Shown: piece after piece, positions 5,579 through 8,100 of the stretch | Layout: every line of letters starts with the position of its first letter | Numbering within the stretch: the first letter of the stretch is position 1 | DNA from: Saccostrea echinata | Taxonomy: Eukaryota | Direction of reading: 5' to 3' | DNA: 64,000 nt | Assembly: GCF_033153115.1 (NCBI RefSeq) | Contig: NW_026889760.1 | Coordinates: 3,534,001 to 3,598,000, forward strand | Translations under genes and position numbers: made by a program | Notes under the pieces: model-generated | What the model was told of the DNA's origin: nothing | Seen by the model: the letters and a program-made list of their open reading frames with translations, nothing else | Database searches by the model: none

Positions 5579-5860
5579 TCATACGAAACCAAAATACTTT
5601 AATATTCCGTAAATCATTCCTGTTCCTTTGTCCGTTAGAACCTGAAAAAGTTATATATTCTTCTGTAAATAAAACCAATAAATGTATGTCAGAAAAAATA
5701 AACAATAATCTTTATTCTCTGTATCAAAACTGTACCTTTAAGGCACTGAACAGCGGTCTCCTTCCCCAGGATAAAGCTGTCACCGTATCTTCTTTTTTCG
5801 TTACATTCTGAATTATAAAAGAGAAGTTTGAAGCTAACAAGATTAAAATTTGGAACTCAA

Positions 5861-5952
<92 letters not shown>

Positions 5953-8100
5953 CGGTATACTAGTATATGATCTGCAGAACTTTACGATCAAGGATAAATA
6001 TATGTATTAAATAAAGCAAACTATAGCTACACCATCTATAGCAATGTCAAACGTAAATATTAGTGTGTCCTTACCAGTAGTTGATTGTGGACATTCATCA
6101 GCAAACCTCTATGTATTTGCTTGGCCTCAATCCTTTTCTACAAGAGAAAAACCACACAGTCGCTATTATTAATTTTCAAAAACTGCTTTGAGTATTTTGC
6201 GTACATTTATCGAGAGATTCGTTTTCTTACCAGTAGTTGTTCATGTGCAGCGCTGAGCAGTTTTTCAGTCTCACGTTTTGTTTCAACCTTTCTCTGCAAG
6301 AGAAAAGCAACAAAGCTTGATTATAAGCTTATTTTCTGCTCTCTCTTTTCTGAAAATATTTATAAACAGGTCGTCTATTTCTTACCAGTAGTAATTCATG
6401 TTTGTCCTTCAATATTTTTTGATGGTCTCTTTTTGCTTTTGGTTCCTTTTTGGCATTGAAGAATTCCTGTAATTGAACAAATGAGACTTAATTCTATTGA
6501 AAAAACCGGTTTCATTACAAAATTGTTTGTTTATAACTTTCTTAACATAATTTTTATATCCATATTATTCTATACGCTTACTAGCAATTCCTTGTGGAGT
6601 TGGTTTAATCCCAAGGAATGAATTTTCCTGTCTTCGATTTCTCTCTACGATAAACAACAACACATTTTGTCTTTTGGGACGTTGAACAACATACAAACAA
6701 ACATTTTGTCTTTTTAAAAAGCTCACCAGTTCATAAACAGAACGGGAGACTGTTTTGAACTAAATGTGTGAATTTCTTTTCTTACCAGTCGTTTGGCGTG
6801 GTTCCGTTTCAGTATTTTTTGTGGGTCACGTGTTTTTATTACTTCAACTTTCGTCTGCAAATAAATTTAATTTTCTTAATTTGATGATCACCATTGAAAG
6901 ATAAATAGTGTAAATTAAAAAAAAAAATGTTTATAATGTATATTGCTTTTGCTATTATTTCTATTAAGATACCTCTTTTTGCTTCTCTGCCTCTTCCATC
7001 ACCTCCGCCCAGCTGTATTCAAATTTCAATACTTTCATCTTTTCATCCTAGAAAAAGATAAGATAGAAATATTTTGGAGGAACTGTGGCAGTATCAATTG
7101 ATTACAAGTTGTTTTTCCCCTTAAATCCTCAAAAGATCCTCGGAACGTGAAAGCAACTACTGTATGATGTACTTACAAAAGCAAACTTGGGAGTAATTGG
7201 AACATTGATTTAGATCCAGTACTTTTTTGATAATATTCTACAGATTATTTAAATCTTAATGTTAATTATTTTGAAAATCGTATATGAAATACAAAATGTA
7301 TCTTATAAAGATATGAAACAATAGGAGGGAGGAGGGAGTTTTTTCGTGAATGATTTTCGATTCAACATGCATAAAAATAAAATAAAATAAATATATGTTA
7401 ATAAGTAAAAAAAATTAATACGAGTATATTAAAAAAAACTTACTACATTCTTCGCTGCCTCCTCGCCAAAAGCTAGCACTTCCCCGTAATCTATTTTAAA
7501 TGCCATTCTGAAATCTACAAGAAAGATGAAATTTCGAAAGTAATTGCTGTTTTATTGTCAATAAACACAATAATTTATTATAAAATATGGATATGAGGCA
7601 GAACCTTGTTACACATAGATGAAAACCACTGCTTTTTTTCAAAATTTACCTTGCATTGTTTCAAAACGCTTAATGCCATATTGTCACATATTATTTTAAG
7701 AATATCAATTTAATTTTTTTTTTCTTAGCACTTGTATTATTGTAGTCAAGAATTATTTGCTGTGTTCTAGAGTTGTTTATTATATTTGTCTTAACAATAG
7801 CATTGATACCATAGTCTTCCCTGTGGATGCAGATTTAATGATGAGGTTCATTTACATAATTATATGTAGGGTTTGGTTCCTTGGTGCTAATACTTAAACA
7901 CTAAATTTCAGCTTTACTAGCAGACCCCCACTCCAGGCATGCATATTCGTGTAGTCAAAGCTCGACCGATTAAGCTTAGTTTTGTTCAATATTCGACATT
8001 ATTTAACTGTAAGCAATTGCTACATACTTCACATTTGTAATACTCACATTGTACGCCTTTCTTTTGTTTGGTTGCAAAGCAATTGATACTGTGATGTCAT
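5579..8100 (-). CDS. Uncharacterised orphan protein of 203-221 aa encoded by short symmetric exons (His/Leu helical repeats)
   Basis: Exons 8100-8048 (optional upstream ATG), 7507-7444, 7047-6973, 6854-6786, 6644-6582, 6466-6386, 6293-6231, 6137-6075, 5807-5736 and 5641-5579. All have canonical AG/GT ends and join into one open frame: (MTSQYQLLCNQTKERRTI)MAFKIDYGEVLAFGEEAAKNV|DEKMKVLKFEYSWAEVMEEAEKQKE|TKVEVIKTRDPQKILKRNHAKRL|REIEDRKIHSLGLNQLHKELL|EFFNAKKEPKAKRDHQKILKDKHELLL|RKVETKRETEKLLSAAHEQLL|KRIEAKQIHRGLLMNVHNQLL|NVTKKEDTVTALSWGRRPLFSALK|VLTDKGTGMIYGILKYFGFV*. Confidence 0.85.
5864..5951. repeat. (TA)n microsatellite
   Basis: About 88 nt of pure TA inside an intron of the short-exon gene. 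Confidence 0.95.

What the first reader, a model, noticed from the sequence alone, without database searches (positions are those of the whole stretch)
5579..8100. Hidden orphan gene made of symmetric phase-0 short exons, one His/Leu repeat per exon
Seen: nine consecutive coding exons of 63-81 nt; every intron after the MAFK exon is phase 0, and the exons join without stops into a 203-221 aa protein that the ORF track misses entirely. Five central exons are paralogous, with consensus (R/K)x(V/I)ExKxxHxxLLxxxHxxLL, and four of the five end CTG|GTAAG. Three are spaced 155-156 bp apart with similar intron flanks, so the gene grew by tandem duplication of exon-plus-intron units. The last exon gives a short hydrophobic tail (GMIYGILKYFGFV). 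Inference: any subset of the internal exons can be skipped in frame, which would make this a modular isoform generator analogous to schistosome micro-exon genes. The 21-aa (three-heptad) unit with two His residues 8 apart could form a metal-binding helical bundle. I recognise no known family.
Basis: partly seen in the sequence, partly recalled or inferred. Interest (0 to 1): 0.85.

Follow-up and report, generated by a model that had tools for sequence, protein, structure and literature searches.

The report
Expressed short-exon helical-repeat gene, oyster family
This is a real, transcribed and correctly spliced gene of nine tiny in-frame exons. It encodes a 203-residue helical repeat protein, but it is one copy of a rock-oyster (Saccostrea) gene family already listed in databases as "uncharacterized protein", not a unique orphan, and its function is still unknown.

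Summary
On the minus strand, nine coding exons of 63-81 nt, all multiples of three, run from 7506 to 5579 and read as 203 aa without a stop. Intron-less contigs from three public runs reproduce all eight predicted junctions exactly. They also add a 5'UTR exon (8048-8142) and a 3' end near 5513.

It is not an orphan. The genome is Saccostrea echinata. It holds two close nine-exon paralogues, an intact 11-exon paralogue, a pseudogene and fragments. One paralogue is RefSeq XP_061182655.1, "uncharacterized protein LOC133191006". Four homologues exist in S. cucullata. Nothing turned up outside the genus, and Pfam, PDB and fold searches gave nothing. dN/dS between paralogues is 0.20-0.27, so the sequence is under coding constraint.

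About ten loci carry arrays of the same 63-nt, 21-aa exon unit (a hydrophobic residue, then H-x-E-L-L). At least 90 places match the conserved second exon at least weakly.

Growth by exon duplication is supported. One contig skips E3+E4 in frame, which is weak support for modular isoforms. The micro-exon-gene analogy fails on secretion and intron length. Metal binding is untested, and a heptad pattern is not supported.

The scan noted other hidden short-phase-0-exon genes elsewhere in this genome (s1-816156). Whether they are related was not tested.

The parts
8040..8460 (-). Promoter region with a cluster of CRE/ATF half-sites (ACGTCA), including one full TGACGTCA at 8383
   Evidence: There are 6 half-sites in 421 bp against 0.15 expected from the rest of the window (Poisson P about 1.5e-8). 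The region is conserved among the three close paralogues at 84% mean column identity, including the motifs.
8344..8400 (-). Putative distal alternative first exon (approximate 5' end; donor GT at 8343-8342)
   Evidence: It is homologous to the first exon of the RefSeq paralogue model, whose ATG gives the N-terminal MRGVEDFR extension. The window copy has AGG instead of ATG. No RNA contig covered it.
8048..8142 (-). Proximal 5'UTR exon, used in the RNA data
   Evidence: A contig of run X2 joins 8048/8049 to 7514, and a sequencing adapter follows 8142. It holds two upstream ATGs; one opens a 23-codon uORF that overlaps the main start out of frame.
7444..7514 (-). Exon E1: 8 nt of 5'UTR plus the start codon at 7506-7504 and 21 codons (MAFK...)
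6973..7047 (-). Exon E2, 25 codons. This is the most widely conserved 'head' exon (KxLKFxYSWAE motif).
   Evidence: At least 93 six-frame matches genome-wide at E<=10, of which 23 are at E<0.01.
6786..6854 (-). Exon E3, 23 codons, E5-like unit (RDPQKILK)
6582..6644 (-). Exon E4, 21-codon unit
6386..6466 (-). Exon E5, 27 codons; the unit is preceded by a Pro-containing linker
   Evidence: The helix breaks here in the model of the paralogue.
6231..6293 (-). Exon E6, 21-codon unit
6075..6137 (-). Exon E7, 21-codon unit
   Evidence: Its acceptor flank matches that of E6 at 11 of 12 bases.
5736..5807 (-). Exon E8, 24 codons
5513..5641 (-). Exon E9: 20 codons, stop at 5581-5579 and a short 3'UTR. 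ATTAAA signals lie at 5543-5538 and 5528-5523.
   Evidence: A 100%-identical contig of run X1 ends at 5513. The sequence was read.

Best explanation
This is an expressed, protein-coding, apparently unannotated copy of a gene family found so far only in rock oysters (Saccostrea). The mRNA is about 0.8 kb and runs on the minus strand from about 8142 to about 5513. It is spliced from ten exons, nine of them coding, and all eight introns within the coding sequence are phase 0.

The product has 203 residues, no signal peptide, is rich in Lys, Glu and Leu, and is predicted to be almost entirely alpha-helical. Its core is five paralogous modules, each encoded by one exon. The basic module has 21 residues; E3 (23) and E5 (27) carry short N-terminal extensions. 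Each module has a charged first half and a hydrophobic second half of the form LLxx[VIL]HxxLL. This hydrophobic patch continues across the exon junction to the Ile/Val at position 3 of the next module. A nearly invariant His sits inside the hydrophobic face.

The gene and its relatives grew by unequal crossing-over between homologous exon-plus-intron units. Because every unit is symmetric, the reading frame survives both duplication and skipping.

Shown here: transcription, splicing, coding constraint, family membership and variation in module number. Inferred: the protein is an elongated amphipathic helical scaffold whose Leu/His patches mediate self-association or partner binding, and module number (set by duplication and by occasional E3+E4 skipping) sets its length and valency. 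The biochemical function is unknown.
For: - Splicing: intron-less contigs reproduce all eight junctions within the coding sequence, plus the 5'UTR junction. One 393-nt contig with zero mismatches spans E9 to E5.
- No retrocopy: E9 and the strong E2 matches occur only at intron-containing loci, so the joined form must be RNA.
- Coding constraint: dN/dS is 0.20, 0.27 and 0.20 against three paralogues, with Fisher P between 3e-5 and 2e-10. CDS identity is 91.5-92.5%, against 84-88% for the aligned DNA of the whole locus and 69% for introns aligned end to end against L014, indels included.
- Family: paralogue L014 equals RefSeq XP_061182655.1 exon for exon. Four S. cucullata homologues share the architecture at 49-56% identity, with conserved His, Leu and the QKILK motif.
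- Module number varies: L016 is intact with 11 exons and a fused E5/E3 exon.
- Structure: the AlphaFold2 model of the paralogue has long helices at 65-100 and 113-179 with pLDDT 72-85.
- Unit profile: hydrophobic positions are 3, 12, 13, 16, 20 and 21, and H17 is present in 97% of 40 units.
Against: - The window's own product was not returned by database searches with its 88%-identical paralogue, so there is no independent annotation or proteomic evidence.
- The 5'UTR carries an upstream ORF that overlaps the start codon.
- The three runs are only guessed to be RNA by the tool, although GT-AG intron removal shows that they are. They are contigs from one study, so levels, tissue and isoform ratios are unknown.
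- The structural model has low global confidence (pTM 0.25).
- No test of self-association gave a verdict.
- The joined 203-aa model itself was never searched or folded.
Confidence: 0.75

Rival explanations
1. The gene is a modular isoform generator like the schistosome micro-exon genes. Combinatorial in-frame skipping of the symmetric exons would make many protein variants.
For: All coding exons are symmetric and phase 0, so any internal subset can be dropped in frame. One contig in run X3 joins E2 directly to E5 (6973|6466) and so skips E3+E4, which is 132 nt or 44 aa. Its k-mer depth is 34, against 39-51 for the inclusion junctions in that run.
Against: Only that one skip was listed among the 15 joints shown (one further joint was not displayed). 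It was seen in one of three runs and not in X1, which comes from the same sample. It could also come from a paralogue or a deletion allele. Contigs with every consecutive junction exist. Donors are near-consensus GTAAG. The N-terminus is acidic with no hydrophobic core, so there is no signal peptide. Introns are 92-396 bp, whereas MEGs are described as secreted proteins with exons of 3-81 bp and introns up to 5 kb (bioRxiv 10.1101/2023.06.21.545858). No sequence similarity to anything outside Saccostrea was found.
Confidence: 0.1
2. The protein is a metal- or haem-binding helical protein. The conserved His inside each hydrophobic patch would ligate a metal ion or haem between packed helices, or act as a pH switch for assembly.
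For: H17 of the unit is present in 97% of 40 units and lies in the middle of the hydrophobic face. H9 is present in 53%. Several His are invariant between S. echinata and S. cucullata. Designed Lys/Glu/Leu-type amphipathic helices with a single buried His bind haem b by bis-His ligation in four-helix bundles (PMC5936819). This is an analogy only.
Against: There are only 8 His in 203 residues. The E6 His is Tyr in some S. cucullata homologues and in paralogue L016. The AlphaFold2 model gives no confident helix packing (pTM 0.25).
Confidence: 0.15
3. The locus is a transcribed pseudogene or non-coding RNA, and its open frame is a leftover of a recently duplicated coding paralogue.
For: The product is not found in the protein databases. 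There are upstream ATGs in the 5'UTR. The family does decay: L015 has three in-frame stops and a frameshift, L017 and L018 are fragments, and L013 has a GG in place of the E1 donor GT.
Against: All nine exons are intact and all splice sites are used. dN/dS is 0.2-0.27, with a significant excess of synonymous change against three different paralogues.
Confidence: 0.05

Closest known systems
RefSeq XP_061182655.1, uncharacterized protein LOC133191006 (Saccostrea echinata); locus L014, G000:C22:16.80 Mb
   Same: It has the same nine coding exons with the same lengths and phases. Summed exon by exon, 179 of 203 residues (88%) are identical. The promoter with CRE half-sites is conserved.
   Different: The RefSeq model starts 8 codons earlier, at an ATG in the distal first exon. 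The window copy lacks that ATG (AGG), and in the RNA data it uses the proximal first exon instead. It lies on a different contig.
Saccostrea cucullata LOC134279477, LOC134248238, LOC134241971, LOC134282076 (P0001, P0004, P0006, P0003)
   Same: The order of head, modules and aromatic C-terminal tail is the same. The REIED, QKILK and H..ELL motifs are invariant. Identity to the S. echinata paralogue is 49-56%.
   Different: They come from another species. The tail ends CFQWF rather than KYFGFV, and the His of the E6 module is Tyr in several of them. Their exon structure could not be inspected here.
Larger S. echinata superfamily (loci L019, L020, L026 and others)
   Same: These loci have E1-like and E2-like head exons followed by 63-nt phase-0 exons. 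Each exon encodes a 21-aa unit that ends in a hydrophobic residue followed by HxELL, with a GTAAG donor.
   Different: The arrays are much longer (10 or more units), with 4-exon super-repeats and duplicated head exons. Other head-bearing loci carry a 15-aa repeat inside one large exon instead (L021). Most seem not to be annotated as proteins.
Schistosome micro-exon genes (MEGs)
   Same: Both have runs of short symmetric exons, so skipping keeps the frame. Both are lineage-restricted.
   Different: MEGs encode secreted proteins, have exons down to 3 bp and have long introns (bioRxiv 10.1101/2023.06.21.545858). This gene has no signal peptide, has introns of 92-396 bp, shows mostly constitutive splicing and shares no sequence similarity with them.
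One-repeat-per-exon genes such as fibrillar collagens (54-bp exons), nebulin and the titin PEVK region (from general knowledge, not tested here)
   Same: The repeat unit equals the exon, the exons are symmetric, and growth is by unequal crossing-over, sometimes in multi-exon super-repeats.
   Different: The sequences and folds are unrelated. Here the module is a 21-residue amphipathic helix.
De novo haem 'maquette' helices (PMC5936819)
   Same: Both are Lys/Glu-rich amphipathic helices with one His embedded in the hydrophobic face.
   Different: Maquettes are designed proteins with a proven four-helix bundle. No bundle is predicted here and no binding was tested. This is an analogy of mechanism only.

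Membership tests
Saccostrea LOC133191006-like uncharacterized protein family | Nine coding exons of 63/75/69/63/81/63/63/72/63 nt, all introns phase 0 | tested here: met
   The window and L014 (the RefSeq model P0005) have identical exon lengths and splice positions.
Saccostrea LOC133191006-like uncharacterized protein family | Sequence similarity over the whole length | tested here: met
   Exon-by-exon tblastn gives 81-96% identity per exon to L014 and 80-100% to L013. CDS nucleotide identity is 91.5-92.5%.
Saccostrea LOC133191006-like uncharacterized protein family | Head motifs (LDFGEE-type in E1, KFxYxWA in E2) and an aromatic C-terminal tail | tested here: met
   Shown by alignment A3 and the exon translations.
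Schistosome micro-exon genes (MEG) | Short symmetric exons (3-81 bp) | tested here: met
   The exons are 63-81 nt and all are multiples of three. They sit at the top of the MEG range (bioRxiv 10.1101/2023.06.21.545858).
Schistosome micro-exon genes (MEG) | Secreted product with an N-terminal signal peptide | tested here: not met
   The E1 peptide has four acidic residues, no hydrophobic core and a mean hydropathy of 0.19. This was judged by inspection; no dedicated predictor was available.
Schistosome micro-exon genes (MEG) | Long introns between the micro-exons | tested here: not met
   The introns within the coding sequence are 92-396 bp.
Schistosome micro-exon genes (MEG) | Extensive alternative splicing that generates protein variants | tested here: inconclusive
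   There was one E3+E4 skip contig in one run, and contigs cannot quantify isoforms.
Canonical heptad coiled coil | Hydrophobic a/d periodicity of 3.5 residues | tested here: not met
   A Fourier analysis of the mean hydropathy of 40 units gives the strongest harmonic at period 4.2 (amplitude 26.4), against 13.3 at period 3.5.
Canonical heptad coiled coil | Long uninterrupted alpha-helices | tested here: met
   The AlphaFold2 model of paralogue P0005 has helices of 36 and 67 residues with pLDDT 72-85.
Any Pfam family or solved structure | Significant profile or fold match | tested here: not met
   Pfam gave no family for any exon or for P0005, and only sub-threshold noise for P0001, P0002 and P0004. 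The best PDB profile match had E=0.07, in the Rad50 coiled coil. Foldseek against PDB found no match. The Atlas search by features gave no usable hit, and its nearest models by structure were generic long-helix proteins.
His-ligated metal/haem helical bundle | Conserved His on the buried face of packed helices | tested here: inconclusive
   The His is conserved and lies in the hydrophobic face, but helix packing is not predicted with confidence.
His-ligated metal/haem helical bundle | Measured metal or haem binding | not testable with these tools
   This needs recombinant protein.

The most novel reading that the evidence does not exclude
Saccostrea may have evolved, and be actively amplifying, a genus-specific superfamily. 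In it a conserved two-exon head is fused to arrays of one-exon, 21-residue amphipathic modules with a buried His. These proteins would assemble through His-mediated metal, haem or pH-dependent contacts, which is of interest in oysters known for high metal loads. Module number would be tuned both in the germ line, by unequal crossing-over, and in the transcript, by cassette skipping.
Probability: 0.1. Interest if true: 0.6.

Novelty: new member of a known kind. Interest (0 to 1): 0.35.

Why it matters
The gene is a clean, RNA-verified example of a gene that ORF-based tracks, and apparently the public annotation, miss. It also documents a young, genus-restricted gene family whose growth mechanism can be read directly from the genome. 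That mechanism is duplication of symmetric exon-plus-intron modules, with a fused recombinant exon in one paralogue and multi-exon super-repeats in relatives.

This is useful for oyster genome annotation and as a case study of exon-level tandem amplification. It does not open a new kind of biology unless a function for the conserved His/Leu patches is found.

Tried and rejected
All searches were exon by exon by reference, and the database paralogue P0005 served as proxy.
- Pfam on the nine single exons gave nothing.
- Pfam on P0005, P0001, P0004 and P0002 gave only sub-threshold noise.
- The PDB profile search gave only weak matches to the Rad50 coiled coil and to talin, with E of 0.07 or more.
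- The ESM Atlas search gave no usable hit by features, and generic long-helix proteins by structure.
- Foldseek of the AlphaFold2 model against PDB found no match.
- The homodimer prediction for residues 62-185 of the paralogue returned 'no answer'. It counts neither for nor against self-association.
Public annotation around the paralogues and the exon structure of the S. cucullata genes could therefore not be inspected.
- Three homologous-protein searches, limited to 0.55-1.75 times the query length, and the unit-profile search of 1.84 billion representatives found nothing outside Saccostrea. Longer or unannotated relatives in other bivalves are not excluded.
- A literature search for the LOC and XP identifiers gave 0 papers.
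- The search of earlier findings by sequence was blank, which means nothing.
- Large downstream ORFs of other head-bearing loci (L021, L023, L024) had no Pfam domain.
- The TE-derived idea was dropped. No transposase or reverse-transcriptase ORF was seen at the family loci.
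Full report
**Observation**

The feature lies on the minus strand. Reading the reverse complement and anchoring each exon gives nine coding exons:
- E1 7444-7506
- E2 6973-7047
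- E3 6786-6854
- E4 6582-6644
- E5 6386-6466
- E6 6231-6293
- E7 6075-6137
- E8 5736-5807
- E9 5579-5641, stop included

Their lengths are 63, 75, 69, 63, 81, 63, 63, 72 and 63 nt. All are multiples of three. All internal exons have an AG acceptor behind a pyrimidine tract and a GT donor, mostly GTAAG. The total is 203 codons. The mechanical ORF list shows only fragments of 30-53 aa here, so an ORF track would indeed miss the gene. Four of the five central exons end CTG|GTAAG, and the ends of E5, E6 and E7 are 155 and 156 bp apart.

**Transcription and splicing**

The look-up of sequencing runs returned three runs of one study, from the same organism, kept as Logan contigs. When laid on 5300-8500, their contigs skip every predicted intron at exactly the predicted GT..AG boundaries: 5641|5736, 5807|6075, 6137|6231, 6293|6386, 6466|6582, 6644|6786, 6854|6973 and 7047|7444. 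One 393-nt contig with no mismatch runs from 5513 through E9, E8, E7 and E6 into E5.

A further contig joins E1, which starts at 7514 with 8 nt of 5'UTR, to an upstream non-coding exon at 8048-8142. A sequencing adapter follows 8142. The 3' end near 5513 lies 10 nt past the second of two ATTAAA signals.

The tool only guesses that these runs are RNA. However, the joined form cannot be genomic. Six-frame searches of the whole genome find E9 and the strong E2 matches only at intron-containing loci. The contigs therefore report spliced RNA.

Contigs of 90-95% identity and loose ends that lead into other exon sequences show that paralogues are transcribed too. One contig of run X3 joins E2 directly to E5 (6973|6466). 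This drops E3+E4, which is 132 nt, in frame. It was not seen in the other two runs. Contigs cannot tell whether it comes from this copy, a paralogue or a deletion allele.

**Not an orphan**

A DNA search of the window's own genome (923 Mb; the window is C11:3534001-3598000) finds the whole locus again twice on C22 at 84-88% identity, introns and promoter included. More diverged copies lie on C22, C30 and C10. Exon-by-exon tblastn and splice-site inspection show the following:
- L013 and L014 have the same nine exons intact, although the E1 donor of L013 reads GG.
- L016 on C30 is an intact 11-exon version of 263 codons. It has an extra E4 and E5 and a 120-nt exon whose first part is E5-like and last part E3-like. 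This is the footprint of unequal crossing-over between E5 and E3.
- L015 is the same type but dead, with three in-frame stops, a frameshift and no E8.
- L017 and L018 are fragments.

**Database relatives**

The joined model could not be sent to any tool. I therefore built a profile of the 21-residue unit from 40 exons given by reference (A1) and searched 1.84 billion representative proteins with it. There were only three hits, all from Saccostrea. Their ids opened the family to the other tools.

- P0005 is RefSeq XP_061182655.1, 'uncharacterized protein LOC133191006 [Saccostrea echinata]'. It lies on a contig of 19,678,253 bp, the length of C22, so the genome is S. echinata.
- P0005 is exon for exon the L014 model, plus eight N-terminal residues from an ATG in a distal first exon. 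The window copy has AGG at that place.
- Summed over exons, the window product is 179/203 (88%) identical to P0005.
- The window product was not returned by searches with P0005 or with the family alignment, so it appears to be unannotated.
- Four S. cucullata proteins are 49-56% identical to P0005 and share the same order of parts.
- Nothing outside the genus was found. The search sees only proteins of 0.55-1.75 times the query length and only annotated ones.

**Coding constraint**

The Nei-Gojobori dN/dS is 0.20 against L013, 0.27 against L014 and 0.20 against L016. Each comparison shows a significant excess of synonymous change (Fisher P between 3e-5 and 2e-10). CDS identity is 91.5-92.5%. 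The aligned DNA of the whole locus is 84-88% identical between the copies. Introns aligned end to end against L014, indels included, reach only 69%, and two of them differ greatly in length. Together with the conservation in S. cucullata, this rules out a non-coding or decaying locus. The 5'UTR does carry a 23-codon upstream ORF that overlaps the start codon.

**The superfamily**

The E2 'head' exon matches at least 93 places in the genome at E up to 10, and 23 of them at E below 0.01. At several sampled loci (L019, L020, L026) an E1-like and an E2-like exon are followed by long arrays of 63-nt phase-0 exons with GTAAG donors. Each exon encodes a 21-residue unit that ends in a hydrophobic residue followed by HxELL. 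There are ten or more in a row, with 4-exon super-repeats and duplicated head exons.

The unit profile finds 44 such exons at about ten loci at E<=0.01, which is a lower bound. Other head-bearing loci carry a 15-residue repeat inside one large exon instead (L021). These longer genes were not among the database hits, so most are probably unannotated.

**What the protein looks like**

The composition is K 31, L 26, E 23 and H 8 of 203 residues. E1 is acidic with no hydrophobic core, so there is no signal peptide. The C-terminal 13 residues are hydrophobic and aromatic, but they contain Lys and are too short for a membrane span.

Across 40 units the hydrophobic positions are 3, 12, 13, 16, 20 and 21. 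His is present at position 17 in 97% of units and at position 9 in 53%. Positions 2, 4, 6, 7, 18 and 19 are charged. On a helical wheel, positions 12, 13, 16, 17, 20, 21 and 3 of the next unit span a 180-degree face. Each hydrophobic patch therefore crosses an exon junction and has the conserved His in its middle. The strongest periodicity is 4.2 residues, not 3.5, so the 'three heptads' reading is not supported.

AlphaFold2 on the family alignment (first row P0005) gives an almost all-helical chain. It has long helices at 65-100 and 113-179 with pLDDT 72-85 and a break at the Pro-containing start of E5. Global confidence is low (pTM 0.25). Pfam, PDB sequence profiles, Foldseek and the ESM Atlas give no family. 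The Atlas's nearest models by structure, and the weak PDB profile matches, are only generic long helices.

**Promoter**

The 421 bp upstream of and around the first exons hold six ACGTCA half-sites, one of them a full TGACGTCA. The rest of the window predicts 0.15 (P about 1.5e-8). The motifs are conserved in both close paralogues. This points to CREB/ATF-type control, which is an inference from the consensus only.

**Interpretation**

Shown:
- The gene is a real, spliced, constrained, non-secreted helical-repeat protein gene.
- It belongs to a family found so far only in Saccostrea.
- Its modules equal its exons.
- Module number has changed by unequal crossing-over.
- At least one in-frame cassette skip exists in RNA.

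Inferred:
- The protein is an elongated amphipathic scaffold whose Leu/His patches mediate self-association or partner binding.

Designed Lys/Glu-rich helices with one buried His do ligate haem in four-helix bundles (PMC5936819), but that is an analogy and not a test.

The micro-exon-gene analogy is formal only. MEGs are described as secreted proteins with exons of 3-81 bp and introns up to 5 kb (bioRxiv 10.1101/2023.06.21.545858). This gene has no signal peptide, has short introns and is mostly spliced constitutively.

**Limits**

- The joined protein was never searched or folded.
- No other mollusc genome was reachable.
- The RNA evidence is from contigs of one study with unknown tissue.
- The run of N near 3520-3650 was left untouched.

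**Verdict**

The gene is a new, seemingly unannotated member of an uncharacterised, genus-restricted family. Its architecture (one repeat per symmetric exon) is of a known kind.

Noticed in passing
window 19534-19567: Two full TGACGTCA palindromes lie 26 bp apart. This is a second CRE-type cluster in the window and possibly another promoter. No family exon lies nearby.
   Followed up: partly
window 7514-8142 (5'UTR of the spliced mRNA): There are two upstream ATGs. One opens a 2-codon uORF and the other a 23-codon uORF that overlaps the main start codon out of frame. The sequence is conserved in the paralogues.
   Followed up: partly
L016:2789-2908 (G000:C30, + strand): A 120-nt exon has an E5-like first 22 codons and an E3-like last 18. 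It looks like a recombinant exon left by unequal crossing-over, in an otherwise intact 11-exon paralogue.
   Followed up: yes
L015 (G000:C22:13367300-13372600, - strand): This is a pseudogene copy of the 11-exon type, with three in-frame stops, an 82-nt frameshifted exon and no detectable E8.
   Followed up: yes
L013:2477-2478 (G000:C22:15.99 Mb): The donor after E1 reads GG instead of GT in an otherwise intact nine-exon paralogue. The copy may be splicing-defective or may use another donor.
   Followed up: no
L019:1738-6307 and L027:69-708 (G000:C10:2.095-2.101 Mb): The head exons (E1-like plus E2-like) are tandemly duplicated. An array of at least 11 63-nt HxELL exons follows, with a 4-exon super-repeat of about 890 bp. 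No matching database protein was found.
   Followed up: partly
L021:65-1057 (G000:C42, - strand): Downstream of two E2-like head exons, a single 331-codon open frame holds about 13 tandem copies of a 15-residue His/Glu/Leu repeat. Here the repeats are not split by introns. It has no Pfam domain.
   Followed up: partly
L028:2547-5963 (G000:C22:6.56 Mb): A 1139-codon open frame holds many C2H2 zinc fingers. It is an unrelated neighbour of the L026 family locus.
   Followed up: no
window 5856-5952 and 8630-8677: There is a (TA)n microsatellite of about 100 bp inside intron 7 of the gene, and reads are cut there. A (CT)n run lies just upstream of the promoter.
   Followed up: no
window about 3520-3650: There is a run of 134 N, either an assembly gap or a masked stretch.
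   Followed up: no
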